A stretch of DNA of 64,000 bases from IMG/VR virus record IMGVR_UViG_3300031963_000004, positions 62,001 to 126,000 of that record. One strand, 5' to 3'. Within the stretch, counting starts at the first letter, position 1, and every line of letters starts with the position of its first letter. The translations under genes were made by a program, and so were the position numbers. The notes beneath the pieces were generated by a model. It did no database searches. It saw nothing but the letters and a program-made list of their open reading frames with translations, and had not been told where the DNA came from. Shown here in pieces: positions 2,377 to 60,903 of the stretch.

Positions 2377-2697
2377 TTAAACGGTGAAGCTTTCCCCGCA
2401 ACCACAACGTGCTTTTTCGTTTGGATTTATAAACTCAAAGCCCTCGTTGAGTCCTTTACGAACATAATCAACTGTAAGGCCTTTAACATATACTAGACTT
2501 TTTTGGTCAACTATAATGTTGACACCATGTGTTTCTATTACATTGTCTCCGTCATTTGTATTGTCAACGTATTCAAGTATATACGCAAGACCACTACAAC
2601 CAGTAGTCTTAACACCAACACGAATTCCCATACCTTTACCACGGTGTAGTAAATGTTTAGATATTTTTTTAGCTGCTCGTTCGGTTACTTCAATCAT
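2377..2697 (-). CDS. iscA: A-type Fe-S cluster carrier IscA/HesB
   Basis: [16 protein letters not shown] and C-terminal RCGCGESF with the three conserved Cys. Confidence 0.92.
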
Positions 2698-7300: not shown

Positions 7301-8722
7301 TCACTTCCTCAGACTATTAATCATGCTTTTTAGTCTGACGCTTGGAATGTCTGCTGTCACTTTGGGGAGTTCTATTTTCTCCTCAGGAAGCTCACTGTTA
7401 TGTATAGGGCTCGGGGCTACGGTTACACTAGCACTTCTAAACGTACTAATTATATCTTTTGCGCTAGGTAATGGATTATTAGCTTTGAAATCATCAGTTC
7501 CAGGGTCTGTAATTCTCAATGTTTCTACGTTAAACTCAAGTTCAATCTTTTGCCCTACTCCTGAACTGCTACGTGTTTTCATAAGCTGAATCTGATATTG
7601 ACCACGTTCACGCATACTACGACTTGTAAAAATACCAAACACATTGTCTGCCGTATTAATCTTACTAATACCACCTGAGATATGACTATGATCAAATTCA
7701 ATTTCTTCTACTGCACTACGATTTAACTGACTTGCTGTAACTAGCAGCACGTTCAATTCTTTGGATAGATTACGCAATTCTTCCGACACATATTTGTCTT
7801 TGATAAACAAGTCTGAGGGGCTGACTTTTGCGCTGACGGGCATAAGAAGGTCAAGATAGTCAACACAGAGAAAATCAATCTTTGCCCCTGTCTTAATTTC
7901 ATATTCCTTACAATATGCTCGTAAGTCATTAATTGTGCTTTGAGCAGGTAAATACTTAATCTGTAGTTTACCTGACTTCTTAGCTAACATCTTTACTTTC
8001 ATTTCAACATTCTCAATTTCCTTAAAAATGTCACGGCTGCTAGTTTCTGTCATCATACTATCTATACGCATCGAACAAAGACCTTCTGCTAATTCTAATG
8101 TGACATAGATACCAGTAAGTCCTGCTTTACTCCAGTTAACTGCAAGATTTTGCATGAATAATGATTTACCTGATCCTGAACCACCTGCGAATATTTGTAG
8201 TTCACCTCTATTGAAACCACCATATAGCTTACTATCAACAGTGGGCCATCCTGTACTGATTTGACCATTACTACTCTTAAGTAGCATCAATCTACCACGT
8301 GGGTCAGAGAAATAGTCAGTACCCATATCTTTTGTAATTGATATTTGCACTGCGTCTTTAATTAATTTTTCAACTGGATCAAAATTACCTTTTTCTAACA
8401 AGTCGGCTGATTTTAGAATCGCTCTTTCTAGTTCTTGTCTACGGGTAAAGGCTTCAAACTCGTCAAGAAACCATTCATAGTGTTTATCATCTAGATCAGG
8501 AATGGGTTCTAAAGTTGAATTAGATGCAGCATTTACTTGCTTGATATCTGGAATAACATTATATTCTTCTACATAGGTTTTCAAAAACTTTGCTGCTTCT
8601 CTTAAAGACTTATCAAAGTTTTCATGATTCATAATATTGGATACACGCATATATAGCTCACTGCTAGTGAGCATCATACATAGAAATAAACGCTGTACCT
8701 CTACATTATATTCTTTTAACAA
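7301..8722 (-). CDS. gp41: Replicative DNA helicase, DnaB/T4 gp41-like
   Basis: Walker A GGSGSGKS, VTLELAE, VDYLDLL, TASQLNRSA, KTRSSSG. Confidence 0.92.
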   Translation of the reverse strand: MLKEYNVEVQRLFLCMMLTSSELYMRVSNIMNHENFDKSLREAAKFLKTYVEEYNVIPDIKQVNAASNSTLEPIPDLDDKHYEWFLDEFEAFTRRQELERAILKSADLLEKGNFDPVEKLIKDAVQISITKDMGTDYFSDPRGRLMLLKSSNGQISTGWPTVDSKLYGGFNRGELQIFAGGSGSGKSLFMQNLAVNWSKAGLTGIYVTLELAEGLCSMRIDSMMTETSSRDIFKEIENVEMKVKMLAKKSGKLQIKYLPAQSTINDLRAYCKEYEIKTGAKIDFLCVDYLDLLMPVSAKVSPSDLFIKDKYVSEELRNLSKELNVLLVTASQLNRSAVEEIEFDHSHISGGISKINTADNVFGIFTSRSMRERGQYQIQLMKTRSSSGVGQKIELEFNVETLRITDPGTDDFKANNPLPSAKDIISTFRSASVTVAPSPIHNSELPEEKIELPKVTADIPSVRLKSMINSLRK

Positions 8723-9677
8723 GTTTTTTCCTTTGCATTTCTATTTTTATTTTACTGCTTGTTGCATTTTGTAGTATACTTATAAGTGTTGGTAACTTAC
8801 CATATTTTACTACAGCATCGTTCACATCCTTAACATCATCTGCCCAGTTAGGTAAACTAACGCTGTAACCTACTTCTAATGCTTTGTCTATTGATTCTAA
8901 TCCAGTCTTGTCACGGTCGGGCACAAAGATAACTCTCTTATATAATTGTTTTAATAATTTAGCCTGATCATCATTAATTGTGTTGTGTGTCAATGCACAA
9001 CCGTCTATACTAAGAGCATCAAATATACCTTCAACTAGGATACATACCTCGTAATTAGATTTTTGCATATCGTAGTTGAATACATATCCGGGCTGTTGAT
9101 CGTTTATGTATTTTGGTATTCTGTCATCTAAGTACCTGCTAGTATGTCCTACAATTTTATTCTTGTAAAAGTAGGGTATGATAATTCTTTTACTATTGCG
9201 CCCTTCTTCCTTTGGCGTAACATAAAAGGTGTACTTATTAAAATCGATTTTTCTCTTTACAAGATAATCAACAAATATTTTATGATCTGGATTGTGTACA
9301 TCAATGGATTCACATTCAGGTAAGTTCTTTAAAGTAAAATTGAATGTTTTTTCTTTCTCGTATTTTACAGTAAAGTCTAATAAATCTTTGTGCTGTAGGC
9401 TTTCTAAACTCCATCGTTTTATTTCCTGATCGTCGATTCCCGCATACTTCAGTAAATCAGTTGTCTTTTGACCAATGGGTCTGCCCAATTCAAAATTACA
9501 TGTGAAGTTACAATTGAAACAATGATAAGTCCAATTGTTACCATCAAGCTTTATGCCTCCCCTGCCGCGCTTATCTTGTCTATGTCCTAATGAAGTGCAG
9601 CATATGGCATTAAAGCTGTACCAACCGCTAGGAGTTAATCTTTTCTTACCTGGAATAATAGATAGAATATCAAACAT
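8706..9677 (-). CDS. gp61: DNA primase, T4 gp61-like
   Basis: Zn-binding CC...YHCFNC, RIIIPY, TOPRIM VEGIFDA, DRDKTG and KDVND. Start moved to 9677 because the track start (9695) lies inside the promoter. Confidence 0.9.
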   Translation of the reverse strand: MFDILSIIPGKKRLTPSGWYSFNAICCTSLGHRQDKRGRGGIKLDGNNWTYHCFNCNFTCNFELGRPIGQKTTDLLKYAGIDDQEIKRWSLESLQHKDLLDFTVKYEKEKTFNFTLKNLPECESIDVHNPDHKIFVDYLVKRKIDFNKYTFYVTPKEEGRNSKRIIIPYFYKNKIVGHTSRYLDDRIPKYINDQQPGYVFNYDMQKSNYEVCILVEGIFDALSIDGCALTHNTINDDQAKLLKQLYKRVIFVPDRDKTGLESIDKALEVGYSVSLPNWADDVKDVNDAVVKYGKLPTLISILQNATSSKIKIEMQRKKLVKRI

Positions 9678-9683
9678 GCTATT

Positions 9684-9712
9684 ATTATAGCACAAAAATA
9701 CAAGGAATGCAA
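9684..9712 (-). promoter_or_regulatory. Sigma70 promoter for primase (leaderless)
   Basis: TTGCAT-N17-TATAAT with ATG 6 nt after the -10 element. Confidence 0.7.
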
Positions 9713-10574: not shown

Positions 10575-10952
10575 ATGCATAACGACTTTTTCAAAAACTT
10601 AACTGAAAACCACCCCTTCATTACAGTCTGTAACTATTCCGGTCAGGATTATGTTGGGATTATACAGAACAGGGACGATGTTGTAACTACTATATACGAC
10701 TATGGTTCTATAATAGCGCCAGACTTACGTGAAAAATTCCTAGAACTAGGAGATATTTGGTGGTGGGAGAGCAACAGACTTATACCAATTAACATGTTTC
10801 TTAAGGAAGAATGGATAATTTTTAAGCCCTATCTTAGGACTTTTAACAATAAAAGCTTAAGTATTCTTCATGGACCTATCTGTAGTATCAGTGAATTAAG
10901 TAAACGCAGGTCTAAGAAAAAATCTATAACTTTAGTTCGTAGAATGACCTGA
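10575..10952 (+). CDS. Hypothetical protein
   Basis: 125 aa; divergent late promoter TAAATA at 10554-10559. Confidence 0.6.
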   Translation: MHNDFFKNLTENHPFITVCNYSGQDYVGIIQNRDDVVTTIYDYGSIIAPDLREKFLELGDIWWWESNRLIPINMFLKEEWIIFKPYLRTFNNKSLSILHGPICSISELSKRRSKKKSITLVRRMT

Positions 10953-11513
10953 TTCAATAAGATTCATATGCACTGCAACTAACCAAGCATATCCTATAGC
11001 GTGTGCTTTTTTAAACGTATACCCATCTTCTGCTTTATCCCAAACTGTTTTTGCAACCTCTGACCATGGTAATCCGATTAAATGTTTCTTACCAGGTCTA
11101 ATAATAGCTAGAAACATAGCAAGTCTAGGAATACTATCTATAGGTTCTGGCATTTTTTGTAGTGTGCTATACTGATTAGCCAAATGAATTAATTGCGACA
11201 CAAAAGTTTCTTCTTTTAGTTTTGACCAGTTAGGATCACGCATCAATTCAATAAGATGATTTTCGTCTTTGACTAAACCATATACATGAACATTCAGAAA
11301 ATCTAATTTTGTATATCCTCGTTCTTCTGCTTCTGCATAATCTATATTTGATATGTCATTGATAGCATCGTATGGAATTTCATTAACGTAGATACCTGTA
11401 TTATGTTTGCGAATAGGTTTTACGTTACGCATCGCCGCTGAGATATGTTTGATATGTTTTAATATCTTATCTCTGTCGCCGAAATCAATATCGATATCAC
11501 TATTAAACTTCAC
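10932..11513 (-). CDS. dnaE: Miniature DNA polymerase III alpha (DnaE-type, family C) catalytic core
   Basis: DIDIDF..RDKILKHI, KHNTGIYV, GYTKLDFL, LAIIRPG and GYTFKKAHA match the DnaE motifs PDFDVDF, KHAGGVVI, GLVKFDFL, ALFRPG and GYGFNKSHS, in order. Confidence 0.85.
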   Translation of the reverse strand: MKFNSDIDIDFGDRDKILKHIKHISAAMRNVKPIRKHNTGIYVNEIPYDAINDISNIDYAEAEERGYTKLDFLNVHVYGLVKDENHLIELMRDPNWSKLKEETFVSQLIHLANQYSTLQKMPEPIDSIPRLAMFLAIIRPGKKHLIGLPWSEVAKTVWDKAEDGYTFKKAHAIGYAWLVAVHMNLIESGHSTN

Positions 11514-12067
11514 TGCACTAATCCTAACTTCATTAATTTCTTGTATGCTTGTTGCACAACAATAGCTTGCCGTTCAGCATCTTCTACTGCCTTGTGACTT
11601 GTTACATGTCCACCATCTTTAAGTTTAACACCTGCAATTTCAAACAATGTTCTAGTGTCACGAACTGTGTAGAAAGGCCATGGAATAGGATTAGGTCTAT
11701 CTGTTAGTGTTTGACGCATTGCTGTTTCCATTGCAACAACATCGAATGGTGCGCCGTGACTCCATACTGCTCTACGATTCCAACAGAATTTGTAAAGAAC
11801 TTCCATACAATCTTTTAATGACATTCTATTATTATCGCCCATAGCTTCTTCTTGTGCTGCGGCACTTTGAGTAGACCACCAACGTATCGTATCATCATTG
11901 ATGATTCTATTATATTGTTCGGTTTGATCTTCTAACGTAGGACGCAGTTCTAATCTTTCAACTACACCATCACCCTTTGGATCAAAGCGAACTACGCCAA
12001 TAGTAAGTATGACACAATATGGACTTGTGTCAAGACTTTCTATGTCAATCATTATGTCGTTAGCCAT
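11510..12067 (-). CDS. DEDDh 3'-5' exonuclease
   Basis: IMIDIES, WSHGAPFD, RDTRT, HKAVEDA. Confidence 0.85.
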   Translation of the reverse strand: MANDIMIDIESLDTSPYCVILTIGVVRFDPKGDGVVERLELRPTLEDQTEQYNRIINDDTIRWWSTQSAAAQEEAMGDNNRMSLKDCMEVLYKFCWNRRAVWSHGAPFDVVAMETAMRQTLTDRPNPIPWPFYTVRDTRTLFEIAGVKLKDGGHVTSHKAVEDAERQAIVVQQAYKKLMKLGLVQ

Positions 12068-13120: not shown

Positions 13121-13819
13121 TTACCATTTGAGTTCTGTGAGCAAGTTCTTAACTTCTTCTACTTCTTTGGTCATTTTAGAAAACTTGATTGCCCATTGTG
13201 TCGGCTGTATATAGTCATAGACAATTTTAACCTGATCTTCGTTCAGGTCGTCAATGAAGGCTACTCCACTTTCACTTTGATAAAGCATCCAGGGACTTAA
13301 TTTCCCTTTCGTTATCTCATGGCATATCTTGTTACGATTTCCATATCTTAGAAGGTCGTTCGGTTTAGTATTTTCTTGTTCAGCTAAATTCATGCAGGTT
13401 TCTACACTTCGTTGTACTGCATCTAAATGATCTTCTGTCTTAAGATAATTTAATAAAAATTCTGTGTAGACTGAATCGCTTGTCCAAGTATCTATCTTTA
13501 TTTTTTCTTTCAATAAGTAATCAATATATCTAGGTATGTTAACGCAATTGACCTCCATAACATAATTACCAAACTTAGCGAATGCAGTATAGTATGCGGA
13601 GCGAATGTAATCTTCGTAGGTTCTTTCTTTTTTGCTTGTGCTATGTTTTTTATAAAACTCTAGATAGCATTGATACCCTATTTGATTACCTCTACGATCC
13701 TTTTCTAACCACCTGTGCTTATACTCACAAATATGCTTTAAGAAAGATTGCTCTTGTACGAATGACCTTTTGCAAAATTCGCAGGTCATCTTATCATCAG
13801 TTACCTTTTTCTTTTTCAT
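13121..13819 (-). CDS. Conserved hypothetical protein with an N-terminal Zn finger
   Basis: CEFCKRSF....FLKHIC. Confidence 0.65.
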   Translation of the reverse strand: MKKKKVTDDKMTCEFCKRSFVQEQSFLKHICEYKHRWLEKDRRGNQIGYQCYLEFYKKHSTSKKERTYEDYIRSAYYTAFAKFGNYVMEVNCVNIPRYIDYLLKEKIKIDTWTSDSVYTEFLLNYLKTEDHLDAVQRSVETCMNLAEQENTKPNDLLRYGNRNKICHEITKGKLSPWMLYQSESGVAFIDDLNEDQVKIVYDYIQPTQWAIKFSKMTKEVEEVKNLLTELKW

Positions 13820-14390
13820 ATTCTTTTATGTGTTCTTCTGTAACAAAATCATTAAGTGCTTCTATGTCAGCCAACTTCATGTCAGGGTATAATTGACCTA
13901 AGTAATATTTTTTCTTTTGCTGTCTTTGTATTTCCTCACTGACCATATTAATCGTTTCTTCTGATTCTCTAGGATATATTTTTTTGTAGTATTCCGTAAT
14001 GTCTTTTAAAGTTGCTTTTTCTTTTAGATTAGTGATTGATTCTTTGATATGAGGTATCCATTGATGAAATTGTTTACCGAAGCTAGGGCTGATAGAGCAT
14101 AACATTAACCATTGTAGTTTAGGATGATCTTTAAGGCTACTATCTAACAAATACATGTTAGCGTTCTCGTTTGTGCTTTGTACATAGTACCTTTGTATCT
14201 CTCCATTGCCTTTAATTGCACTCATCCACTGCAATAACATATACGGTACAAACTTTTTCTTCTGATCTTCTGTTAGTCTATCGTAATATCCATAATCTTT
14301 TTTATCCAGTGCTTCTAATGCCTCAAATAGTTGGAAGTCCACATCAGTGAACTTTTCATCTGCACTAGTTTTAGTCTTTGCCTTTGCCAT
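13797..14390 (-). CDS. Probable clamp-loader small subunit (T4 gp62-like)
   Basis: FVPYMLLQWMS...NENAN...HPKLQWLML...KQFHQWI resembles the gp62 pattern; located in the replication cluster. Confidence 0.5.
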   Translation of the reverse strand: MAKAKTKTSADEKFTDVDFQLFEALEALDKKDYGYYDRLTEDQKKKFVPYMLLQWMSAIKGNGEIQRYYVQSTNENANMYLLDSSLKDHPKLQWLMLCSISPSFGKQFHQWIPHIKESITNLKEKATLKDITEYYKKIYPRESEETINMVSEEIQRQQKKKYYLGQLYPDMKLADIEALNDFVTEEHIKEYEKEKGN

Positions 14391-14890
14391 TAAAATGCCT
14401 GTCTATAATCTACAATCTCACAGTTTCTACTAATCTCTTTAACAAAGTAAACGCATCTGGGCTTGTGCGTATCTTCAATCGGTACGCATAGAAACTGACC
14501 ATTCTTCAATCTAGGAGCATACCAAGTTACGTCATGATATATGTCAACGATTTCTATGTCTACGAAAGAAGGTTTGAAACTACTCAATGGATTAAATTCA
14601 AATACTTTAAACCCACGATCATTAATACTAGTCAACGGTAATGTTTCTAAGTCACCAAGTTCGGGTTCGCCAATCAATACTTGCCAATCAACAGGCATCT
14701 TAATTTTCTTATCGCCTATTCGTAATACTAGTGCAGGGCTGTTGAAGCTTTCTAGAAATATTAATGGTATATAATGGTAATCTACATTCGCGGGATTGTT
14801 GTTGTCTAATATGGCGAACCTTAAGTCATCTATTTCTTCAGGTAATGTTTCTAGGTTATAAGCTTGATTGTCTAATGTTAGTATTTTCAT
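14390..14890 (-). CDS. Conserved hypothetical beta-rich protein, possibly a degenerate stand-alone Hint fold
   Basis: 166 aa; see finding. Has its own sigma70 promoter. Confidence 0.55.
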   Translation of the reverse strand: MKILTLDNQAYNLETLPEEIDDLRFAILDNNNPANVDYHYIPLIFLESFNSPALVLRIGDKKIKMPVDWQVLIGEPELGDLETLPLTSINDRGFKVFEFNPLSSFKPSFVDIEIVDIYHDVTWYAPRLKNGQFLCVPIEDTHKPRCVYFVKEISRNCEIVDYRQAF

Positions 14891-14896
14891 AGTCTA

Positions 14897-14925
14897 ATTG
14901 TATCATGTCTTTACTTGTATGTCAA
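14897..14925 (-). promoter_or_regulatory. Sigma70 promoter (leaderless)
   Basis: TTGACA-N17-TACAAT; ATG at 14890, 6 nt after -10. Confidence 0.75.
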
Positions 14926-16368
14926 CTTTTCAACTGTAAACGGATAATTAGCCTCTTTATAAAAATCTTTTCGTTTAGCCAAATGCCGTTTACTAAATCT
15001 ACAGTTGCTAGTTATATCCCATATTTGGACGAAATCTTTATCTTCAGCCTTTCGGATACCTCTACCTATCGATTGTATAACCCGAACGAAGCTTTTTCCA
15101 GGTTCAACAAGAATAAGATTAAAGATACGGGGTATATTAATACCCACAGCAGCAACACCGTAAGTCGCAACAATAACCTTATTATTGCTTGTCGCAATTT
15201 CATCGTATTCTTCTTTTCTTTCTGAAAGTTTAGTACCACCGCTGACAAATACAGAATCAGGTATACGGTCAATTAATTCTTTGCCTGCATTTACTCTATC
15301 AACTAACACTAATGTGTTTCCACTTTCTTTAATGTTTAGTATCAATTCAGCCACATTGTCTAATCTAGTTTTATCTTCTAGCAAATGCTTTAATTCACTT
15401 TGATAATCTTTGAATTCAACGTTATCTTGCATTTGAATTACATTAACGTGGCATCTAGCAAGTACACCTTTATCCTGTAATTCGCTTGCTGCTAATTTGT
15501 TTATCACAGGACCTAAACTAACAAACAACGCCTGACTAGCAAACAACTCTTTGGGTATGGTTCCTGTTAGTCCCCAACGAATAGGTATGTGCCCGAAAGG
15601 ACCTGTCAATAGTGTTTTAAGAACATCTGCTTGCGCCATGTGCGCTTCATCGATAATCAAACACACAACATCTTCAATAAACTCACCAATAGGTACCTCT
15701 GCTTCCTTAGCTTTCGTTGCCTTAAGTATGTTATTCAAACTTTGCCAAGTGCATATCGTGTGAGTTCTGCCTATCTCTTTTCTTTCACCGAAGTACACAC
15801 CCACATCAAGCCCTAAGTTAACATAGTCTGCTTCAGTTTGTACGACAAGACTTTTGTTTGGTACTACAACAATACTTCTGCCATATTTTTCTACACTATG
15901 ACTAAGTGCAGCAGTCATTAATGTCTTACCTGCACCCGTAGCTACCTCTTGTACACTTTGTATATTGGCAAGAAAATCATTGACTACCTTTAACTGATAG
16001 TCACGAAACTTAATTGGCTCACCGCATTGCGGATGACCTTTAGGCCATGTATGATTACTAAATGTATCTTCCTGTATTTGTGTGAATACAAATTGATTTT
16101 GTGTAGTTCTTAAATCTTCTATCTGTATATCATACCCTGCACTGTCAATGACTGGTATAATACTTTCTAATAGATTAATGAATGTGCTGCCGCCCAAACT
16201 GAAATAGCTAACCTTGCCGTTCCATCTACCCAATTGGACACTTGGACGAAATCTAGCACCTGGTATTTCATATTCAAACATCTTCATTAACTTCTTTCTA
16301 TCAGTTAATTCCAAACCCGATAGCTTACAGTTAACTTCATCTTGTATAATTATTTTACATTCTTTCAT
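14911..16368 (-). CDS. uvsW: SF2 DNA helicase UvsW
   Basis: ATGAGKT, IIDEAH, GLTGT, QSIGRGIR. Confidence 0.9.
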   Translation of the reverse strand: MKECKIIIQDEVNCKLSGLELTDRKKLMKMFEYEIPGARFRPSVQLGRWNGKVSYFSLGGSTFINLLESIIPVIDSAGYDIQIEDLRTTQNQFVFTQIQEDTFSNHTWPKGHPQCGEPIKFRDYQLKVVNDFLANIQSVQEVATGAGKTLMTAALSHSVEKYGRSIVVVPNKSLVVQTEADYVNLGLDVGVYFGERKEIGRTHTICTWQSLNNILKATKAKEAEVPIGEFIEDVVCLIIDEAHMAQADVLKTLLTGPFGHIPIRWGLTGTIPKELFASQALFVSLGPVINKLAASELQDKGVLARCHVNVIQMQDNVEFKDYQSELKHLLEDKTRLDNVAELILNIKESGNTLVLVDRVNAGKELIDRIPDSVFVSGGTKLSERKEEYDEIATSNNKVIVATYGVAAVGINIPRIFNLILVEPGKSFVRVIQSIGRGIRKAEDKDFVQIWDITSNCRFSKRHLAKRKDFYKEANYPFTVEKLTYK

Positions 16369-40023: not shown

Positions 40024-43000
40024 ATGAGTTGGCCAGCCAATCCAGTAAACGGACAAAGAGTTCAGATTAACGGTGTTTTATATGAATTTAACGCAGCGAA
40101 TGAAACCTGGGATAGAATAGGTGGGTATCCTGATAACTTTATAGTTGAGTTCTTACAAACTCCTAATTTAGTAGTCACCGGTAGAGCGACCTTTACTGAT
40201 GCCGGGAACGTTAAAATTCAAGGTGGTTTCGCCAACTATGTCTTAGTTACAGACGGATCCGGTAATCTTTCTTGGCAACCACAAGCTGATGTTTCAGCAG
40301 CGGGTGTAAACAATGAGGTTCAATTTAATACAAATGATGCACTTGATAGTTCTGCATCATTTACTTTTGACAAAACATCAAATACATTAACTGTCCCTAG
40401 GATAGCGAGTACCCTTACTACATCCGCACAACCAAATATTACTAGTGTTGGTACACTAACAAGTTTAAATGTTAGTGGTAATGCTACCTTTAGCAACAAT
40501 ATTACTGCTAACAATTTTGCTGGCAACTTCTCAGGAAATTTTACAGGAAATTATCGTAGTCCTGGTTCCAACACAGAATTATTATTCAATAACCAAAGTA
40601 ATATTGGTGCTAGTAACAAACTTACATTTGATGGCACTACGCTAAATGTTCAGGGTAATGTCACTGCAACTAATGCTAATTTAGGAAACTTAGTTACTGC
40701 TAATTTTATAAATTCAACATTAACAGTTGCCAATCAACCTAATATTACTAGATTAGGAACTTTAGTAAATCTAACATCATCAGGTAACATCGTAGCACCT
40801 AATTTTGTAGGTAATATAGTAGGTGGTAATATATCAGGTAACTTTGTTGCGCCTGGTTCTAATACACATATGTTACTTAACTATCAAGGTAACATAGCAG
40901 CTACCTCCAATATTACTTTTGCTGATGGATTAATGAATGTTGCAGGTAATATTAATGCAGCTAACATAACCGCTGTTAGTGACATTACTGCAACTACACT
41001 AACAGGTAGTTTGAAAACTGCAAGTCAACCTAATATTACTAGCTTAGGTACACTAACAGGATTAAATGTAACTGGTAATGCTACTATATCAGGTAATGTT
41101 ACTGCTGCCAATTTAAGAGGTAATGTAATTGGTGGTACAATTACAGGTACATTTAGTGCTCCAGGTAATGTTACAGAAGTAGTTTATAACAAACAGGGTT
41201 CATTAGGAACAAGTAGTAATTTTAAATTTGATAATGAAACACTTACTGTAACTGGTAACACGATTTCAGGTAATGTATATGCTAACAGTGGTACGATTGG
41301 TGCTAGTTCTATTGTAGGTACAATTGCAACAGCTAACCAAACAAGTATTACAAGAGTTGGTACATTAGTAAACGCAGCGGTAACTGGTAATGTTACAGCA
41401 GGAAACGTTTATGCTAACATGGGAACAATTGGTGCGGGTTTCCTAACTGGTACGTTAACTACAGCATCACAACCTAATATTACAAGTGTAGGGACAATTA
41501 CTTCTTTAACTGTATCCGGTAACTCAACTTCAGGCAATGTATATGCTAACAGTGGAACTATTGGTGCGAATAGAATAACAGGTAATCATTATACTGCCCC
41601 TACTAATTCGTCTAACACGCAGATATTAATAAACAATCAAGGTAATATCACCGGTTCAAGTAATTTAACATTTAACGGAACTGTATTAAATGTTGCAAGT
41701 AACGTAAACGCAGCAAACATTACAGCAAGTAATGTAACTGCAACTTTATTTACAGGAACATTAACTACACCTTCGCAACCTAATGTAACTAGTGTTGGCA
41801 CACTAACAAGTTTGAATGTTGGTAGTAATGTAGATGTAGCGAATGTTCTAACTGCTAATAAGATAATAGCGAATAGTATTGAGACTGATGTAATACTGGG
41901 TCAATTAACTGCGCCTGCAGGACTAGCAGCAAACAATCAGGTCTTGTTTAATTTAAATGGTGTAGTAGATTCTAGTTCAAAACTTGAATTTAATCCTATA
42001 GGTACAGCTACTTTAACATTAAATGGTAATTTAACTACAGGAAATGCAAATTTAGGAAACAGAGTTACTGCTAATTATATTCAAGGTAGTATTTTACCTA
42101 TTTCAAGTTCACAACCTAACATCACAACAGTTGGCACATTAACTGGACTTGGTGTAGATGGGCCTATTAATATAGCAAATAGTGTAATTACTATTGACAG
42201 TAACTCATATATTGTAGGTAACTTAATCCCTGTAACATCTCCTACAAGCGCAACTGACACATTTACAGGTGACGGTGTACAAACATTATTTGTATTGTCC
42301 GTACTACCTTACCCTGGTGACATAGTAAACATTACAATTGATGGTGTTGCAGAAAATCCTCTAAATTATACAATCCTTAATAAGGACTTAACATTTAATA
42401 CTGCTCCGGCAGTTGGAGCAGCAATTGTAGTACAAATGCAGTTAAATACTCCAATTTATGATTTAGGATCTCCGACTGCTAGATGGCGTGATTTATGGTT
42501 ATCTGGTACTACTATTAAACTAGGTACTGCTACAATTACAAGTACAGATACAGGTACAATTGATACAGGAGGTGGTGAGTTCCAATCTGAAGTTTTAACT
42601 TCTACTGCTACTGATATTGCTCCATTCATTGTTTATAGTAACGTAATGGTTGGTAATTTAAATGTACAATATCTACATGGTTATGAACCATCTACAAGTA
42701 ATCTAGCAAACACGATTGTATTAAGAGATGAATTTCATAATTTTGAAGCAAATGTAATTACAGCAAGATTAGAGGGTAATGCTACAAGATCAAATACAGT
42801 AATTAATCCAGCGCAACCAAATATAACAAGTGTAGGTTTACTCACACATTTAGACGTAGATAATAAACTTACCGCAGCTAACATAGAACTATCATCAAAT
42901 ATTAGTGCAGAATATTTTAAGGGTAGCGGAGCTGAATTATACAATATTAATGGTGCTAATGTAAGTGAAGTACCGTTAGCTACATTCGCTACTGATGCAC

Positions 43001-46000
43001 AAGATGCAGTATTCGCAGTTGATGCAGAAACAGCACAGTTTGGCGTAAATGTAACAGGATGTTCTCAACCAAATATTACAAGTGTAGGCACATTAATATC
43101 TCTTAAAGTTACAGGACAAATTGAAGCAGGAAGTATTGATGCTTCATTAGGTAATATTAAAGGTGCTAATTTCATTGGTGGTAATGTAAGTGGTAATATT
43201 TCAGGCACATTTAGAGCTCCAGGTGGGATAGCATCAAATACGGAAGTTCTTTTCAATAAAGAAGGAAATATCGGCGGAAGTGAAGGATTTAAATTTAATA
43301 GTTTAGTTAATTCGTTGACTATTACAGGTAAATTTAATTCTATTGATGCTAATTTAGGTAATCTAGTTGACGCAAACTTCTTTAGAGGTTCCGGTAATAA
43401 CTTAAGTAATATTCGTGGATCTAACGTTAACGGTGAGGTAGCGTTTGCTGCAACTGCAAATAGTGTAGCCGGTGCTAATGTTTCAGGTCAAGTAGCTAAT
43501 TCGTTAGTTGCAGGTACTGTTTACACTGCTGCACAACCAGCAATCACTAGTGTTGGTACATTGACTGACTTAAATGTTAATTCAGGAACCCTAGTAACAA
43601 GTAATCCAATAGACCTATTGCAAACATGGAATAACAGCAGTGTTGCATTTACTGGTATAAAACAAGTTGTTACTGATACACAAAGTTCAGCAGAATCATT
43701 ATTAATAGACCTACAACAAAACGTAGGTGGTGTAGCTACAAGTAGATTCAAAGTTAATAAAATAGGTAATCTTACTACAGGTAATGTTATTACTGGAAAC
43801 ATTGAGGGTACTATAATTACAGGTGCGCAACCTTTTATTACAAGCTTAGGTACACTATCAACATTAACTATATCTGCAAATATTCAATCAGGTAATGCTA
43901 ATTTAGGTAATCTAGCTAGAGCAAACTTCTTTAGTGGTGATGGCTCATTGTTAACAAATGTTCCTGCAGGTAACAGATTACAAAACGGTACAAGTAACTT
44001 GCAAATAGTTAACAATGGAAATATAAACATTGCTATTGATGGCACAAACGATGTCTTAACATTAGGAAACGTGTCTGGGGTCTACGTAGCTAACCTCAGA
44101 GGCAATCTACTTTCAGGTAATGCAAACTTAGGTAATTTAGTAACTGCAAATTTCTTTGCAGGAAACGCAAGTAATTTATTTAATATAGTTGGTGCTAATG
44201 TTACCGGTACAGTATCAAATGCAACTCATGCGTGTACAGCTAATACAGTAACAAATGCAACACAAACTAATATTACAAGATTGGGTACATTAACCGAACT
44301 TACACTATCAAGTATAGCAGACCCAAGCTTAGGTAATAATGTAACTGCAAGTTTCTTTACTGGTGTAATTACTCAAGCAGCATCAGCACAACCTAACATT
44401 ACAAGTGTAGGTAGATTGACTGGTCTAACAGTAGGAAATGCAACTGCAAACACTGTATTTGGTAACGGAACCATTACTGCTGCTGGAAATATTAGAGGTG
44501 CTAATATTGAGGGTAACCTAGTAGGCAATGGTAGTGGCATAACATACTTAAATGGTGGTGTAGTTAATGGTGATGTTCCGAGTGCTGCTACTGCTACTAC
44601 AGCAGGAACTGTACTTTCATCTTCACAACCAAATATAACAAGTGTTAATACTTCAAGTGGTTTAACATCATTAAAAGTTTCAGGCGAAACTGATTTAATA
44701 GGTAATGTAATAATTAGAAGTAATCTTACTGTACAAGGTACTACGATTACAGCTAATGCAACTACAATGAATGTTAGAGATCCTATTATACAAATAGGTG
44801 GGAATACGTCAGGTGGTGCGTTACCAAACGACGACGGAAAAGATAGAGGAATTTTACTACATTATCACAACGGAGTAACACCAGTTGATGGATTTATGGG
44901 TTGGGATAACGATTTAGAGCAATTTACTTTTGCTAGTAGAGTAAGTGTAACCAATGAAGTTGTTACATTCTCAGAATTAGGTAATATAAGAGCAAGTTAT
45001 TTCTTAGGTAACGGTTCTCAGTTAGAAGGTTTACCTCCACCAAACGAAATATTTAAAGGTACAAGTAATGTAAAAATTCCTGATTTAGACGGTAATGTAA
45101 CTATATCTGCAAACAGTGTTGCCAACATTGTACAAATACACGGTAATAGACCTAGTATAGGTAATGGAGTAATTGTTGCAGGTAATCTTACTGCAACAAG
45201 ATATTTTGGTGACGGAAGTCAATTAACGGGAGTAACAACAACAGCGATTTCCAATGGCACAAGTAATGTTACTTTTGCGGGTGCAGGTGGAAACATTACA
45301 ATGGCAGTTGGTGGCGTTTCTAATGTATTACAAATTGATAGTGTTGGTAACGTAGAGATAAAGGGTTTATTAAAAACAGGTACAGGTTCAGGTGGTAACA
45401 TTGCAGGTGCGAATGTAATTAGTGCAAATACATTTATCGGTAATTTAGCCAATGGTACAAGTAACATAAGAATTACACAAAATGGCAATGTCGGTATATC
45501 CTCTAACGGTGTATCAAATGCTGTAATAATTGCCGGTGGACTTGCTAATGTATTGACTGTAGCAGGTAATATTGATATTGGAAGTAATTGGTTTAGAGGT
45601 AACGGTGCGTTGTTAACTAGTTTACCAACTCCTACTTCTATGACTAACGGTACAAGCAACATTGTTGTTGGGTCAAGCACTGACGTAACTATTAGCGCAA
45701 ATGGTCAATCATCAATTATTGCCGTAAAAGGTAGCGGAACAGCGGGCGCAACTGGTGCAAATGTCAGTGGTTATCTTTCTGTATCCGGTATAATTACCTC
45801 AACAATTGCAACCGGCACAGCACCATTGACTGTAACAAGTACAACACGTGTTGCTAATTTAAACGTTAACTATGCAAACGTAAGTGACTTTAATGTAGTC
45901 ACCGCACAAACAACTGGAACATTATATCCTGCATTGATAAGTGGTGCTACTTCAGCAAATTATGCTTTAGGTGCAAACGCAGGTTTATCGTTTAATGCTG

Positions 46001-46524
46001 CAACTGGTGCATTGACTGCAAGTTCTTTTGTTGGTACAGCGACTGGACCATTGGCGAATGGTACAAGTAACGTCAGTATTGCATCAAGTGGCGGCAACGT
46101 AACTGTTAGTGCGGGCGGCACTGCAAACTTATTAACAGTTACAAGCACAGGTATATTAGGCACATTTGTAAATAGTTCGGATGTTATAAGAGATTACGCA
46201 ACTGTAAGTGTATCGCATGATTATAACCTAGCATCTGTTTTATATGTAAGTGGAGTTACTGGTGCATTGTCCTTAACATTCACAAATATTCCTACAACCA
46301 ATAGCAGGGCACTTGTTATTCCTGTTATTGTTGCACATGGTGCTACGGCTATGACTTATCCAACTTCAATATCAATCAACGGGGTAGGCGGACAAACAAT
46401 TAATTATTTACAAGGTACGACCCCAACTGCTAGAACTAACAAAACAGAAGTATTAGGATTAACATTAATTAGAACAGCTTCTAGTACATGGGTAGTTTTA
46501 GGTTTAGTTTCAAGTTACGGATAA
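40024..46524 (+). CDS. Giant repetitive tail-fibre/virion surface protein (2166 aa)
   Basis: N/T/G/S-rich; about 14 QPNITSVGTL repeats and 6 GTSN(V/I/L) repeats; late promoter at 39995-40000. Confidence 0.85.
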   Translation: MSWPANPVNGQRVQINGVLYEFNAANETWDRIGGYPDNFIVEFLQTPNLVVTGRATFTDAGNVKIQGGFANYVLVTDGSGNLSWQPQADVSAAGVNNEVQFNTNDALDSSASFTFDKTSNTLTVPRIASTLTTSAQPNITSVGTLTSLNVSGNATFSNNITANNFAGNFSGNFTGNYRSPGSNTELLFNNQSNIGASNKLTFDGTTLNVQGNVTATNANLGNLVTANFINSTLTVANQPNITRLGTLVNLTSSGNIVAPNFVGNIVGGNISGNFVAPGSNTHMLLNYQGNIAATSNITFADGLMNVAGNINAANITAVSDITATTLTGSLKTASQPNITSLGTLTGLNVTGNATISGNVTAANLRGNVIGGTITGTFSAPGNVTEVVYNKQGSLGTSSNFKFDNETLTVTGNTISGNVYANSGTIGASSIVGTIATANQTSITRVGTLVNAAVTGNVTAGNVYANMGTIGAGFLTGTLTTASQPNITSVGTITSLTVSGNSTSGNVYANSGTIGANRITGNHYTAPTNSSNTQILINNQGNITGSSNLTFNGTVLNVASNVNAANITASNVTATLFTGTLTTPSQPNVTSVGTLTSLNVGSNVDVANVLTANKIIANSIETDVILGQLTAPAGLAANNQVLFNLNGVVDSSSKLEFNPIGTATLTLNGNLTTGNANLGNRVTANYIQGSILPISSSQPNITTVGTLTGLGVDGPINIANSVITIDSNSYIVGNLIPVTSPTSATDTFTGDGVQTLFVLSVLPYPGDIVNITIDGVAENPLNYTILNKDLTFNTAPAVGAAIVVQMQLNTPIYDLGSPTARWRDLWLSGTTIKLGTATITSTDTGTIDTGGGEFQSEVLTSTATDIAPFIVYSNVMVGNLNVQYLHGYEPSTSNLANTIVLRDEFHNFEANVITARLEGNATRSNTVINPAQPNITSVGLLTHLDVDNKLTAANIELSSNISAEYFKGSGAELYNINGANVSEVPLATFATDAQDAVFAVDAETAQFGVNVTGCSQPNITSVGTLISLKVTGQIEAGSIDASLGNIKGANFIGGNVSGNISGTFRAPGGIASNTEVLFNKEGNIGGSEGFKFNSLVNSLTITGKFNSIDANLGNLVDANFFRGSGNNLSNIRGSNVNGEVAFAATANSVAGANVSGQVANSLVAGTVYTAAQPAITSVGTLTDLNVNSGTLVTSNPIDLLQTWNNSSVAFTGIKQVVTDTQSSAESLLIDLQQNVGGVATSRFKVNKIGNLTTGNVITGNIEGTIITGAQPFITSLGTLSTLTISANIQSGNANLGNLARANFFSGDGSLLTNVPAGNRLQNGTSNLQIVNNGNINIAIDGTNDVLTLGNVSGVYVANLRGNLLSGNANLGNLVTANFFAGNASNLFNIVGANVTGTVSNATHACTANTVTNATQTNITRLGTLTELTLSSIADPSLGNNVTASFFTGVITQAASAQPNITSVGRLTGLTVGNATANTVFGNGTITAAGNIRGANIEGNLVGNGSGITYLNGGVVNGDVPSAATATTAGTVLSSSQPNITSVNTSSGLTSLKVSGETDLIGNVIIRSNLTVQGTTITANATTMNVRDPIIQIGGNTSGGALPNDDGKDRGILLHYHNGVTPVDGFMGWDNDLEQFTFASRVSVTNEVVTFSELGNIRASYFLGNGSQLEGLPPPNEIFKGTSNVKIPDLDGNVTISANSVANIVQIHGNRPSIGNGVIVAGNLTATRYFGDGSQLTGVTTTAISNGTSNVTFAGAGGNITMAVGGVSNVLQIDSVGNVEIKGLLKTGTGSGGNIAGANVISANTFIGNLANGTSNIRITQNGNVGISSNGVSNAVIIAGGLANVLTVAGNIDIGSNWFRGNGALLTSLPTPTSMTNGTSNIVVGSSTDVTISANGQSSIIAVKGSGTAGATGANVSGYLSVSGIITSTIATGTAPLTVTSTTRVANLNVNYANVSDFNVVTAQTTGTLYPALISGATSANYALGANAGLSFNAATGALTASSFVGTATGPLANGTSNVSIASSGGNVTVSAGGTANLLTVTSTGILGTFVNSSDVIRDYATVSVSHDYNLASVLYVSGVTGALSLTFTNIPTTNSRALVIPVIVAHGATAMTYPTSISINGVGGQTINYLQGTTPTARTNKTEVLGLTLIRTASSTWVVLGLVSSYG
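41269..41560 (+). repeat. Three intragenic repeats at 132-bp (44-aa) period
   Basis: GGxAAyGTxTATGCTAAC starts at 41269, 41401 and 41533 (GNVYANxGTIGA). Confidence 0.8.
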
Positions 46525-46527
46525 TAT

Positions 46528-50486: not shown

Positions 50487-50546
50487 ACTATAACTATTAA
50501 ATATTTATTGCAAATGAATATTTTTTATTTAAAGGAGACACACAGT

Positions 50547-51572
50547 ATGAAAAAGGTATTTGCATTATTAACCTTAATGGTTTCACAAGTCGCAATGTCA
50601 GCAGAATTTACTGGGGCAGGTGCGACTTTTCCATATCCGATTTACGCAAAGTGGGCAGAAGCTTATAAAGCACAAACTGGGATAGGATTGAATTATCAGA
50701 GCATTGGTAGTGGTGGCGGTATTCGTCAAATCAAAGCAAAAACAGTTGACTTTGGTGCAAGTGATATGCCATTAAAACCAGAAGAACTTGAGAAAGAAGG
50801 ACTAGTGCAATTTCCAGCTATCATAGGTGGAGTTGTTCCAGTTGTAAACTTAGATGGTATACAAGGTGGTCAACTAAAATTAACAAGTGATGTTATTGCT
50901 AACATACATTTAGGTAAAATTACTAAATGGAATGACAAAGCTATTGCCGAAATAAATCCTGGAGTTACATTACCTGCATTAAATATCACAGTCGTACATC
51001 GTGCAGATGGATCAGGTACAACATTTATTTGGACAAATTATCTAAGCAAAGCAAACGCAGACTTTCAAAAAACAGTAGGCGAGGGCACAGCAGTTAAATG
51101 GCCAGTAGGTGTAGGTGGTAAAGGTAATGAAGGTGTAGCAGCGCAAGTTCAGCGCATCAAAGGTGCTTTTGGTTATGTAGAATATGCATATGCTAAAAGA
51201 AACAAAATCGCACATACGCAATTAAAAAATCGTGATGGCAATTTTATTCAACCAGATGACAGTACATTCAAAGCAGCAACAGCTAATGCAGACTGGAATA
51301 ATGCTCCTGGCATGTACTTATTATTAACTTGGCAAACAGGCAAAGACGCATGGCCTGCAACTGGCGCAAGTTTTATTCTAATGCACAAACAACAAGCAGA
51401 TGCATTAACTGGTCGTGCTATTTTGAAATTCTTTGATTGGAGTTACAAAAATGGTAGCAAGATGAGTGAAGAATTAGAATATGTTCACTTACCACAGTCA
51501 GTTATTAAGTTGATACAAGAAAACTGGCGCCGTGACTTCAAAGGTCCAGATGGTAACGCAATTTGGAAATAA
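50547..51572 (+). CDS. pstS: Phosphate ABC transporter substrate-binding protein PstS
   Basis: Signal peptide, GAGATFPYP, GSGGG, DFGASD, RADGSGTT, GKGNEGV; AGGAG SD before ATG at 50547. Confidence 0.96.
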   Translation: MKKVFALLTLMVSQVAMSAEFTGAGATFPYPIYAKWAEAYKAQTGIGLNYQSIGSGGGIRQIKAKTVDFGASDMPLKPEELEKEGLVQFPAIIGGVVPVVNLDGIQGGQLKLTSDVIANIHLGKITKWNDKAIAEINPGVTLPALNITVVHRADGSGTTFIWTNYLSKANADFQKTVGEGTAVKWPVGVGGKGNEGVAAQVQRIKGAFGYVEYAYAKRNKIAHTQLKNRDGNFIQPDDSTFKAATANADWNNAPGMYLLLTWQTGKDAWPATGASFILMHKQQADALTGRAILKFFDWSYKNGSKMSEELEYVHLPQSVIKLIQENWRRDFKGPDGNAIWK

Positions 51573-59984: not shown

Positions 59985-60082
59985 TTGTAAATAAATGGAT
60001 CACGTTTTCTTGCTTCTCTTAATTTTTTTCTGTGTAATAATTCTCTGCGAATTTTATTTAAAATCATTCTAATAAAATACAT
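59981..60082 (-). CDS. 33-aa basic peptide coupled to the carbamoyltransferase (not in the ORF track)
   Basis: MYFIRMILNKIRRELLHRKKLREARKRDPFIYK; its TGA overlaps the carbamoyltransferase ATG. Confidence 0.65.
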   Translation of the reverse strand: MYFIRMILNKIRRELLHRKKLREARKRDPFIYK

Positions 60083-60086
60083 AATT

Positions 60087-60902: not shown

Positions 60903-60903
60903 T

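What the first reader, a model, noticed from the sequence alone, without database searches (positions are those of the whole stretch)
10932..11513. 193-aa miniature family-C (DnaE) polymerase with all three catalytic aspartates
The DnaE palm motifs are present in order: DIDIDF (two Asp), KHNTG, KLDFL (third Asp), IIRPG and GYTFKKAHA. The thumb segment between the first two motifs and most of the fingers are collapsed to short linkers. PHP, HhH, OB and clamp-binding parts are absent, whereas bacterial DnaE is over 1000 aa. There is no frameshift remnant or intein and the gene is tightly coupled to its neighbour, so it looks selected rather than decayed. It is either one subunit of a split DnaE whose PHP/GRGS half lies elsewhere, or a minimal stand-alone nucleotidyltransferase.
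Basis: partly seen in the sequence, partly recalled or inferred. Interest (0 to 1): 0.82.

Follow-up and report, generated by a model that had tools for sequence, protein, structure and literature searches.

The report
Half of a split mini DnaE polymerase
This 193-residue jumbo-phage protein is the metal-binding half of a stripped-down bacterial-type (family C) DNA polymerase. Its nucleotide-binding half is a separate gene about 47 kb away, an arrangement already predicted in 2021 and never tested at the bench.

Summary
Window 10932..11513 (-) is an intact 193-aa ORF carrying, in order, the DnaE palm and finger motifs, including the equivalents of E. coli D401, D403, D555 and the steric-gate H760.

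Three lines of evidence agree:
- A profile search of PDB sequences hits only Pol III alpha.
- The AlphaFold model (pLDDT 96) aligns over 182-189 of 193 residues with DnaE residues 397-784.
- The gene is under purifying selection (dN/dS about 0.10, like DnaB) and sits in more than 8000 90%-identity clusters of about 190-200 aa. It is not a decayed dnaE.

It is not a complete enzyme. It lacks the GS (GRGS) nucleotide-binding element. I found that element as a separate 168-aa gene (Pfam PF07733) in the same genome. It lies about 47 kb downstream, outside the window, next to the clamp-loader gene, and has no PHP domain.

Rare natural fusions of the two halves (375-376 aa) fold into one C-family polymerase core (Z 21 to DnaE).

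This is the "minimal, split DNA polymerase III alpha" of group 2.2 jumbo phages predicted by Iyer et al. 2021 (PMC7824862). It is a new member of a known but biochemically untested kind. Its role is inferred: an accessory DNA polymerase working alongside the phage's family B replicase.

The parts
10932..11513 (-). C-terminal (Mg2+-binding, primer/template and steric-gate) subunit of a split, minimal family-C (DnaE-like) DNA polymerase. 193 aa, GTG start.
   Evidence: ORF. PHROG phrog_11778 'DNA polymerase', E 3e-53. Profile search of PDB sequences hits only Pol III alpha. AF2 model has pLDDT 96. Foldseek's top 9 hits are all Pol III alpha. VIA-align places model 1-193 on E. coli DnaE 397-784 (Z 8.4) and Taq 459-844 (Z 9.3). 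Catalytic residues are invariant. dN/dS is 0.10.
11510..12067 (-). Rv2179c-like DEDD-type 3'-5' exonuclease (185 aa), directly upstream with a 4-nt stop/start overlap. A clade-specific neighbour and a possible, untested, trans-acting proofreader.
   Evidence: Pfam PF16473, E 6e-31. PHROG 255 'exonuclease'. Upstream of the C-half in 70/70 related environmental loci and directly adjacent in 37. Not at this position in PA5oct or Phosso.
10575..10952 (+). Conserved convergent ORF of unknown function (125 aa). Its 3' end overlaps the 3' end of the polymerase gene by 21 nt. It is a constant neighbour; a functional link is unknown.
   Evidence: phrog_11637, E 1.7e-31. Homologue in the same convergent position in PA5oct and Phosso and in 71 of 77 environmental loci. 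dN/dS 0.056.
7301..9695 (-). Primase (8706..9695) and DnaB-type helicase (7301..8722). This replication module always lies just downstream of the C-half gene.
   Evidence: Toprim and DnaB_C Pfam hits. Same gene order in PA5oct, Phosso and 80 IMG/VR loci.
13121..16368 (-). Conserved upstream block: a helicase (14911..16368) and three proteins of unknown function, of 166, 197 and 232 aa. In PA5oct this block directly abuts the C-half gene.
   Evidence: PHROG hits phrog_16, 11279, 11758 and 11058. tblastn to PA5oct and Phosso.

Best explanation
The ORF encodes the catalytic-metal half of a two-piece, minimal family-C DNA polymerase of a lake-water jumbo phage.

What is shown:
- The protein corresponds to E. 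coli DnaE from the DxD strand (D401/D403) to the finger helix carrying K758/H760. The thumb and about 110 residues of the fingers are deleted.
- It carries the three catalytic aspartates (D6, D8, D71), K69 (equivalent to K553), the RPG motif, and the steric-gate histidine (H171).
- It lacks the preceding strand, GS loop and helix of the Pol-beta-like fold, which bind the incoming nucleotide's triphosphate.
- That piece is a separate 168-aa protein, ...VWGVGRGSSVAS...EFLK-stop. Its gene starts 46,988 nt downstream of the C-half's start, on the same strand, about 35.5 kb beyond window base 1 and four genes upstream of the clamp loader.
- The break falls exactly where E. coli has the linker PERVSMP (394-400), inside the catalytic palm domain.

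What is inferred:
- The two proteins associate non-covalently to rebuild one active site. There is no room for intein fragments.
- The enzyme is a DNA-templated, dNTP-selective polymerase, because the steric-gate histidine is conserved.
- It has little intrinsic grip on DNA. Having no thumb, HhH, OB or clamp motif, it depends on partners.
- It serves as an accessory polymerase beside the family B replicase that Iyer et al. report for this phage group, for example in primer extension at the primase-helicase or in gap filling and repair.
For: Homology and fold:
- Profile search of PDB sequences hits only Pol III alpha.
- Foldseek and VIA-align on the pLDDT-96 model hit only Pol III alpha, with 182-189 of 193 residues aligned.
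- hhalign places the C-half on E. coli 541-642.

Partner:
- N-half genes are found in the same phage genera as C-half genes, with matching record counts: Escherichia 34/34, Pseudomonas 11/11, Salmonella 8/8, Erwinia 8/8, Xanthomonas 4/4, Yersinia 4/4.
- The N-half of the window's own genome was found by walking along contigs that are 99.9-100% identical to the window and to each other.
- It matches PF07733 at E 1.1e-8. BLAST aligns its residues 134-167 with E. coli 359-392, and the N-half family profile aligns with E. coli 320-394 at 90.6% probability.

One enzyme from two halves:
- Three independent clusters of natural fusions exist (P0159, P0391, P0392; 375-376 aa).
- Their Pfam match runs straight through the junction.
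- The AF2 model of P0159 (pLDDT 90.6, pTM 0.88) matches only family-C polymerases: Z 21.4 to M. tuberculosis DnaE1, 20.5 to Taq, 17.7 to PolC. Pol-beta-like nucleotidyltransferases are the next, far weaker, class, matching residues 103-278, which span the junction.

Selection: dN/dS is 0.10, equal to DnaB's 0.106. Catalytic residues are invariant.

Prior prediction of this same architecture: Iyer et al. 2021, PMC7824862. D401/D403/D555 as active-site residues and H760 as steric gate: PMC8485763.
Against: - No biochemical or genetic data exist for any member in the literature I could search.
- No RNA run holding the stretch was listed, so expression is not shown.
- Heterodimer formation rests on co-occurrence, on the fused relatives and on a model of a fusion that is only about 38% identical to the window's protein. 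It was not modelled for the window's own pair.
- The finger region deleted here includes about 110 residues that in DnaE contact the incoming nucleotide and the template, so activity or substrate could differ from a normal DNA polymerase.
- I saw no family B polymerase in the window or in the 52 kb walked beyond it. The 'accessory to PolB' role therefore relies on Iyer et al. and on the annotation of PA5oct-like phages.
- dS is near saturation (about 1.7), so dN/dS is approximate.
Confidence: 0.85

Rival explanations
1. A stand-alone minimal nucleotidyltransferase: the 193-aa protein works without a partner, for example as a terminal transferase or a maker of signalling nucleotides.
For: All three metal-binding aspartates are in this one chain. 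The model of the chain alone is compact and very confident.
Against: The chain starts at the DxD strand. It lacks the strand, GS loop and helix that every Pol-beta-like nucleotidyltransferase uses to hold the triphosphate. A GS-bearing partner co-occurs in the same genera with matching record counts and is present in this genome. Natural fusions join exactly these two pieces.
Confidence: 0.06
2. A decaying remnant of a full-length dnaE: a recent truncation under relaxed selection.
For: It is six times shorter than bacterial DnaE, and Pfam does not recognise it.
Against: More than 8000 90%-identity clusters and 452 50%-identity clusters exist, with full-length members of about 185-215 aa. dN/dS is 0.10, like DnaB. 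Active-site residues are invariant down to 28% identity. Synteny is conserved from lake phages to PA5oct and Sinorhizobium phage Phosso. There are no frameshifts or internal stops.
Confidence: 0.01
3. The two halves are joined covalently by protein trans-splicing, as in the intein-split DnaE of cyanobacteria.
For: Split dnaE genes joined by split inteins are a known precedent (papers listed).
Against: The N-half ends right after the DnaE-homologous ...EFLK. The C-half begins 5 residues before the DxD strand. Neither has room for an IntN of about 100 aa or an IntC of about 35 aa. Pfam finds no intein or Hint domain. In natural fusions the junction is a plain 10-residue linker.
Confidence: 0.01
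4. A real two-piece family-C enzyme whose main job is not replication or repair, for example counter-defence, synthesis of modified DNA, or priming-related synthesis.
For: The phage group already has a family B replicase (Iyer et al.). About 110 finger residues and the whole thumb are missing. In this clade the gene is paired with an exonuclease of the Rv2179c family, which Pfam describes as an exoribonuclease domain.
Against: The steric-gate histidine and the rest of the dNTP site are conserved. Both genes sit inside replication modules, primase-helicase and clamp loader.
Confidence: 0.07

Closest known systems
Split minimal DNA polymerase III alpha of group 2.2 jumbo phages (Iyer, Anantharaman, Krishnan, Burroughs & Aravind 2021, Viruses 13:63, PMC7824862); PHROG phrog_11778
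   Same: Same family: 48% identical to the PA5oct protein and 45% to those of Atu_ph07 and Phosso. Same division into an N-terminal NTP-binding unit and a C-terminal Mg2+/template unit encoded by distant genes. Same T4-like replication gene context.
   Different: Nothing essential. This member is from an uncultivated lake-water phage lineage that is very abundant in metagenomes. In this clade the gene has acquired an upstream Rv2179c-like exonuclease. I did not find the rare fused forms mentioned in that paper.
Bacterial replicative Pol III alpha (DnaE; E. coli 2HNH/5FKV, Taq 2HPI/3E0D, M. tuberculosis DnaE1 5LEW/7PU7) and PolC (3F2B)
   Same: Pol-beta-like palm with D401/D403/D555 equivalents, K553, the RPG motif, and the K758/H760 finger helix. 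The structural core superposes.
   Different: Absent here: the PHP domain, the thumb, about 110 finger residues, the clamp-binding motifs, (HhH)2, the OB fold and the tau-binding tail. The catalytic domain itself is cut into two polypeptides between the GS helix and the DxD strand. The two halves total about 360 aa, against 1160.
Full-length DnaE of other phages (group 3.2 jumbo phages such as phage G; the 1233-aa DnaE in locus L132)
   Same: Phage-encoded family-C polymerase. L132 shares the GRGS...VDPIKY block with the N-half (tblastn E 2e-7).
   Different: These are host-like, single-chain enzymes with a PHP domain and all accessory domains, and serve as the phage's main replicase.
Intein-split DnaE of cyanobacteria
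   Same: dnaE is encoded as two distant genes.
   Different: There the halves carry split-intein fragments and are spliced into a normal full-length DnaE. Here there are no intein fragments and the split lies inside the palm.
Minimal Pol-beta-like nucleotidyltransferases (CCA-adding enzyme, Cid1/TUT4)
   Same: The core fold shared by all Pol-beta-like enzymes. These are the only non-polymerase structural matches to the fused model, over residues 103-278.
   Different: The similarity is weak (Z 2-3.4). Those enzymes have the GS motif and the aspartates in one chain and lack the DnaE finger helix.

Membership tests
Family-C DNA polymerase catalytic core (DnaE/PolC) | Two aspartates on one palm strand (E. 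coli D401, D403) and a third (D555) on the neighbouring strand | tested here: met
   D6, D8 and D71 align to them and are invariant in 87 diverse homologues. The role of the E. coli residues is taken from PMC8485763.
Family-C DNA polymerase catalytic core (DnaE/PolC) | GS (GRGS) nucleotide-binding loop in the same polypeptide, N-terminal to the DxD strand | tested here: not met
   The ORF starts 5 residues before the DxD strand. The GRGS loop is on a separate 168-aa protein about 47 kb away.
Family-C DNA polymerase catalytic core (DnaE/PolC) | Finger helix with K758 and the steric-gate H760 | tested here: met
   FKKAH171 aligns with FNKSH760. H171 is at least 90% conserved.
Family-C DNA polymerase catalytic core (DnaE/PolC) | Fold: palm plus fingers superposable on solved Pol III alpha | tested here: met
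   VIA-align gives Z 8.4-9.3 over 182-189 of 193 residues for the C-half and Z 15-21 for the fused relative. Foldseek hits are exclusively family-C polymerases.
Family-C DNA polymerase catalytic core (DnaE/PolC) | Pfam PF07733 (DNA_pol3_alpha) above the gathering score | tested here: not met
   No Pfam hit for the C-half even at E 10. The partner N-half does pass, at 35.5 bits against a cutoff of 23.9.
Bacterial replicative DnaE holoenzyme subunit | PHP domain, thumb, clamp-binding motif, (HhH)2, OB fold and tau-binding C-terminus | tested here: not met
   No such Pfam domains in either half. Structural alignments of both the C-half and the fused-relative model reach no further than about E. 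coli residue 784. 24 residues stand in place of the 103 that contain the thumb.
Family-C DNA polymerase catalytic core (DnaE/PolC) | Templated DNA polymerase activity | not testable with these tools
   No experimental report was found.
Split minimal Pol III alpha of group 2.2 jumbo phages (Iyer et al. 2021) | C-terminal unit of about 190 aa with the Mg2+-binding residues, homologous to those of PA5oct, Atu_ph07 and Rak2-like phages | tested here: met
   tblastn finds 96 phage records, all covering at least 80% of the query; all 40 listed are jumbo phages, at 36-48% identity. phrog_11778 matches at E 3e-53.
Split minimal Pol III alpha of group 2.2 jumbo phages (Iyer et al. 2021) | Separately encoded N-terminal NTP-binding unit at a distant locus of the same genome | tested here: met
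   L222:14164-14670 is on the lineage that is 100% identical to the window, 46,988 nt from the C-half start. For comparison the distance is 43.6 kb in PA5oct, about 30-35 kb in Rak2-like phages and 224 kb in Phosso.
Split minimal Pol III alpha of group 2.2 jumbo phages (Iyer et al. 2021) | Host genome is a jumbo phage with T4-like replication genes and a family B polymerase | tested here: inconclusive
   DnaB, primase, UvsX, UvsY and a gp32-like SSB are in the window. A clamp loader lies next to the N-half. Contigs of the lineage reach 369,578 bp. No PolB was seen in the roughly 116 kb examined.
Intein-split DnaE | Split-intein fragments flanking the break | tested here: not met
   The N-half ends at ...EFLK and the C-half starts MKFNSDIDIDF. 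There is no Hint or intein Pfam hit.

The most novel reading that the evidence does not exclude
The split may be functional, not just tolerated. The active site would form only when two replisome sub-assemblies meet. One half is encoded, and perhaps delivered, with the clamp-loader module. The other comes with the primase-helicase module. In this lake-phage clade a DEDD exonuclease gene overlaps the start of the C-half gene by 4 nt and could act as a trans proofreader. Together these would make a three-piece minimal Pol III-like core (alpha-N, alpha-C, an epsilon analogue) of about 550 residues in total. Such a core would be the smallest known proofreading replicative-type polymerase, and a model for an ancestral family-C enzyme.
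Probability: 0.15. Interest if true: 0.75.

Novelty: new member of a known kind. Interest (0 to 1): 0.4.

Why it matters
Family-C polymerases are the bacterial replicases and were long thought to exist only as multidomain proteins of 1000 aa or more. Here about 360 residues in two chains appear to carry the whole catalytic core.

If active, this would:
- define the minimal family-C polymerase;
- show that a Pol-beta-like active site can be assembled from two polypeptides cut between the nucleotide-binding loop and the metal-binding strand;
- give a compact model for how this polymerase family arose.

The family is very common. Each half has more than 8000 90%-identity clusters in metagenomes, and it occurs in therapeutic-candidate phages such as PA5oct and Rak2-like phages, yet it has never been assayed.

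Tried and rejected
1. Searching the window for the partner. GRGS/ERF-type motif scans, tblastn with the N part of a fused relative and two N-half HMMs on six-frame translations found nothing (best E 0.6). The partner is not in the window.

2. The search for related loci with a single N-half, and with alignments whose back-translated patterns did not fit this clade, did not reach the window's lineage. The clade has GVHKIDS where those patterns expected H[LM][IV]D.

3. I hoped to match N-half clusters to C-half clusters by the length of their longest contig. None of the 120 listed rows matched. Walking with the look-up of encoding contigs succeeded instead. The first look-up failed because of a wrongly chosen TTG start.

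4. One MAFFT alignment holding both halves under the fused protein misaligned one set or the other in every setting tried. It worked only after adding two further fused sequences and restricting the N-halves to close relatives. As a result the N region of the fused model rests on a shallow alignment.

5. hhalign of the first, shallow alignment against E. coli DnaE gave only 17% probability. The deeper alignment gave 60.6%.

6. Single-sequence phmmer against PDB gave nothing.

7. RNA evidence: no listed run holds the stretch.

8. The primase dN/dS of 0.96 is almost certainly an alignment or HSP artefact of my script. I disregard it.
Full report
THE OBSERVATION

Window 10932..11513 (minus strand) is an uninterrupted 193-aa ORF. 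It contains, in order, DIDIDF (6-11), KHNTG (36-40), KLDFL (69-73), IIRPG (137-141) and GYTFKKAHA (164-172).

Its GTG start overlaps the stop codon of the upstream gene by 4 nt, and an AGGA lies 12 nt upstream. The same start position is an ATG in 74 of 79 relatives. One metagenome gene caller chose a later ATG and so missed the DxD strand (locus L134). Conservation of residues 1-27 shows that the long form is correct.

IS IT DnaE-LIKE?

Pfam does not recognise the protein, and single-sequence phmmer against PDB finds nothing. PHROGs places it in phrog_11778, "DNA polymerase", at E 3e-53. There are also weak tails to two long DnaE-type PHROGs at the C-terminal motif.

A profile of 87 homologues, down to 28% identity, was searched against all PDB sequences. 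It hits only Pol III alpha chains of E. coli, T. aquaticus and M. tuberculosis (E 1.8e-5 to 1.8e-4). The next hit has E 0.9. The alignment is in three collinear pieces:
- residues 4-21 with E. coli 399-418;
- residues 54-140 with E. coli 538-641;
- residues 151-180 with E. coli 739-769.

This gives the equivalences D6=D401, D8=D403, K69=K553, D71=D555, R139-P140=R639-P640 and H171=H760. D401, D403 and D555 are the active-site aspartates, and H760 is the presumptive steric gate against ribonucleotides (PMC8485763).

D6, D8, K69, D71 and P140 are invariant in the 87 sequences. D10, H37, G40, R139, K142, K168 and H171 are at least 90% conserved.

The AlphaFold2 model is very confident (pLDDT 96, pTM 0.89). 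Foldseek's nine best PDB matches are all Pol III alpha. VIA-align superposes 182-189 of the 193 residues on E. coli DnaE 397-784 (Z 8.4) and Taq 459-844 (Z 9.3).

The protein is therefore the DnaE core from the metal-binding strand to the steric-gate helix, with the loops cut out. It has 24 residues where E. coli has the 103 that include the thumb. It has 22 where E. coli has 111 finger residues. Nothing follows the helix after the KSH motif.

NOT DECAY

Searches found the following:
- more than 8000 clusters at 90% identity, all about 190-200 aa;
- 452 clusters at 50% identity, whose full-length members are 185-215 aa;
- 96 sequenced phage records; all 40 listed are jumbo phages (PA5oct-like, Atu_ph07, Phosso, Rak2/121Q-like, XaC1, a Vibrio phage) at 36-48% identity.

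Among 80 related IMG/VR loci the median dN/dS is 0.10, the same as the neighbouring DnaB (0.106). dS is close to saturation, so the figure is approximate.

WHAT IS MISSING, AND WHERE IT IS

The chain begins at the DxD strand. It therefore lacks the strand, GS loop and helix that every Pol-beta-like nucleotidyltransferase uses to bind the triphosphate.

The 50%-identity search returned one 375-aa protein, P0159. Its C-terminal half is this family, and its N-terminal half contains VIGVGRGSSSASLLLFLLKIHLIDP, the DnaE GS block.

Using that N part as a query, I found a separate gene of about 155-180 aa in the same phage genera as the C-half, with matching record counts: Escherichia 34/34, Pseudomonas 11/11, Salmonella 8/8, Erwinia 8/8, Xanthomonas 4/4, Yersinia 4/4. 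It is always distant from the C-half:
- 43.6 kb in PA5oct;
- about 30-35 kb in Rak2-like phages;
- 224 kb in Phosso.

It has been annotated "DNA polymerase III alpha subunit" in the GAP32 GenBank record JN882285 because it passes Pfam PF07733. In 75 of 75 environmental loci with enough flank it lies 1.5-3 kb upstream of the clamp-loader gene. It too has more than 8000 90%-identity clusters.

It is not in the window.

I reached it in the window's own genome by walking with the look-up of encoding contigs through L135, L136, L219, L221 and L222.
- L135, L134 and L001 are 100% identical to the window over 12.6-12.7 kb.
- Successive walk loci overlap at 99.9-100% identity over 10-12.5 kb.
- The same 244,235-bp JGI contig is listed at the first walk step and the last two.

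The N-half is L222:14164-14670, 168 aa. It ends ...VWGVGRGSSVASFVLYLLGVHKINSLYYDLPIDEFLK-stop. It matches PF07733 at E 1.1e-8 and has no PHP domain. BLAST aligns its residues 134-167 with E. coli 359-392, and the N-half family profile aligns with E. coli 320-394 at 90.6% hhalign probability.

Its start lies 46,988 nt downstream of the C-half's start on the same strand. That is about 35.5 kb beyond window base 1. The local gene order is: 807-aa structural protein, 274, 78, 204, N-half, 111, Cpn10-like, 109, clamp loader.

The N-half ends at the equivalent of E. coli N393, and the C-half's D6 is D401. The cut therefore replaces only the linker PERVSMP, in the middle of the palm.

DO THE HALVES MAKE ONE ENZYME?

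A search restricted by length to fused forms found three independent clusters (P0159, P0391, P0392; 375-376 aa; 78-81% identical; ENA and Logan sources). They are joined by a plain 10-residue linker. Their Pfam PF07733 match runs through the junction, residues 97-207.

The fused gene sits in the N-half's locus context. Its closest relatives, L103 and L104, have the N-half as a stand-alone gene. The fusion is therefore probably secondary.

The AF2 model of P0159 is confident as a single globule (pLDDT 90.6, pTM 0.88). All 17 Foldseek matches with E up to 3.6e-4 are DnaE or PolC. VIA-align gives Z 21.4 (M. tuberculosis DnaE1), 20.5 (Taq) and 17.7 (PolC).

The only other matches are CCA-adding enzyme, Cid1 and TUT4, at Z 2-3.4. 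They cover residues 103-278, the Pol-beta-like core that straddles the junction.

Caveat: the N region of that model rests on only eight sequences. MAFFT could not align divergent N- and C-halves together.

CONTEXT

The conserved order is: helicase, three unknown proteins (166, 197 and 232 aa), C-half, a convergent 125-aa ORF overlapping its 3' end by 21 nt, a structural-like protein, primase, DnaB. This order is shared with PA5oct and, in its core, with Phosso.

It is upstream in 70 of 70 loci. It is directly adjacent in only 37 of them, and it is absent from that position in PA5oct and Phosso.

The rest of the window is a T4-like jumbo-phage mix: UvsX, UvsY, a gp32-like SSB, large terminase, thymidylate synthase, and structural giants of 1221-2166 aa. 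No family B polymerase was seen in the window or in the 52 kb walked.

The associated metatranscriptome study is labelled lake water, but no RNA run holding the stretch was listed.

WHAT IS KNOWN

Iyer, Anantharaman, Krishnan, Burroughs and Aravind (Viruses 2021, PMC7824862) described this arrangement in group 2.2 jumbo phages, naming Atu_ph07 among them. [quoted passage not shown] They suggested that it cooperates with the family B polymerase in synthesis of one strand or in repair.

I found no later paper and no experiment.

VERDICT

The thing is real, selected and striking, but it is a member of an already described, computationally predicted kind.

- the partner's position in this genome;
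- its constant linkage to the clamp loader;
- the natural fusions and their structure model;
- conservation of the steric-gate histidine;
- the selection estimate;
- the clade-specific exonuclease.

That the two proteins form a heterodimer is inferred. So are its being a dNTP-selective templated polymerase and its accessory role.

Noticed in passing
window 10575-10952 (+): A 125-aa ORF of unknown function (phrog_11637) converges on the polymerase gene and overlaps its 3' end by 21 nt. The arrangement is conserved in PA5oct, Phosso and 71 of 77 environmental loci. Its dN/dS (0.056) is lower than the polymerase gene's own (0.10).
   Followed up: partly
window 11510-12067 (-): An Rv2179c-like DEDD 3'-5' exonuclease overlaps the start of the C-half gene by 4 nt (GTGA). 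It is always upstream within this clade but often separated by 0.4-2 kb of small genes. In other PHROG families the same domain is the C-terminal part of much longer proteins (profile positions 641-817 of 823, and 348-524 of 530).
   Followed up: partly
window 13121-14890 (-): Three conserved proteins of unknown function (232 aa with an N-terminal CxxC...HxxxxxxH zinc-finger-like motif, 197 aa, 166 aa) always lie between the helicase and the C-half gene, also in PA5oct. They may be replication accessory factors.
   Followed up: no
locus L102 1066-2193; proteins P0159, P0391, P0392: Rare natural fusions of the N- and C-halves (375-376 aa), located in the N-half's locus context. Close relatives (L103, L104) have the N-half as a stand-alone gene, so the fusion looks secondary.
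   Followed up: yes
proteins P0404 (540 aa) and P0405 (551 aa): Short proteins with PHP (PF02811) plus PF07733 domains, weakly similar to the fused mini-polymerase. They may be truncated or intermediate-size DnaE forms, or gene fragments on short contigs.
   Followed up: no
window 10932-10960 (C-terminal tail of the 193-aa protein): The last 6-12 residues are poorly modelled (pLDDT about 65) and vary in length. Many relatives end in a recurring [ST][LF][ND]xx[ND]-like tail, which could be a partner- or clamp-binding peptide.
   Followed up: no
window 2377-2697 (-): An IscA/HesB-type Fe-S cluster biosynthesis protein (PF01521) is encoded by the phage, next to a PD-(D/E)XK-like exonuclease (1654-2343, phrog_298).
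   Followed up: no
window 50508-51572 (+) and 58494-63173 (-): Auxiliary metabolic genes: a PstS-like phosphate-binding protein, a Nol-like carbamoyltransferase and two radical-SAM proteins in a row.
   Followed up: no
window 40024-50193 (+) and 54835-58503 (-): Three very large ORFs (2166, 1221 and 1222 aa) with almost no family matches, presumably fibre or structural proteins. A 2613-aa ORF with a weak Mtd_N hit starts just beyond the window's left end (locus L135 11103-18944).
   Followed up: no
locus L222 14709-22424: Next to the N-half and the clamp loader, the phage encodes a Cpn10 (GroES)-like protein, PhoH, a DnaJ-like protein and a ClpB-like AAA+ chaperone. This is a chaperone cluster beside replication genes.
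   Followed up: no
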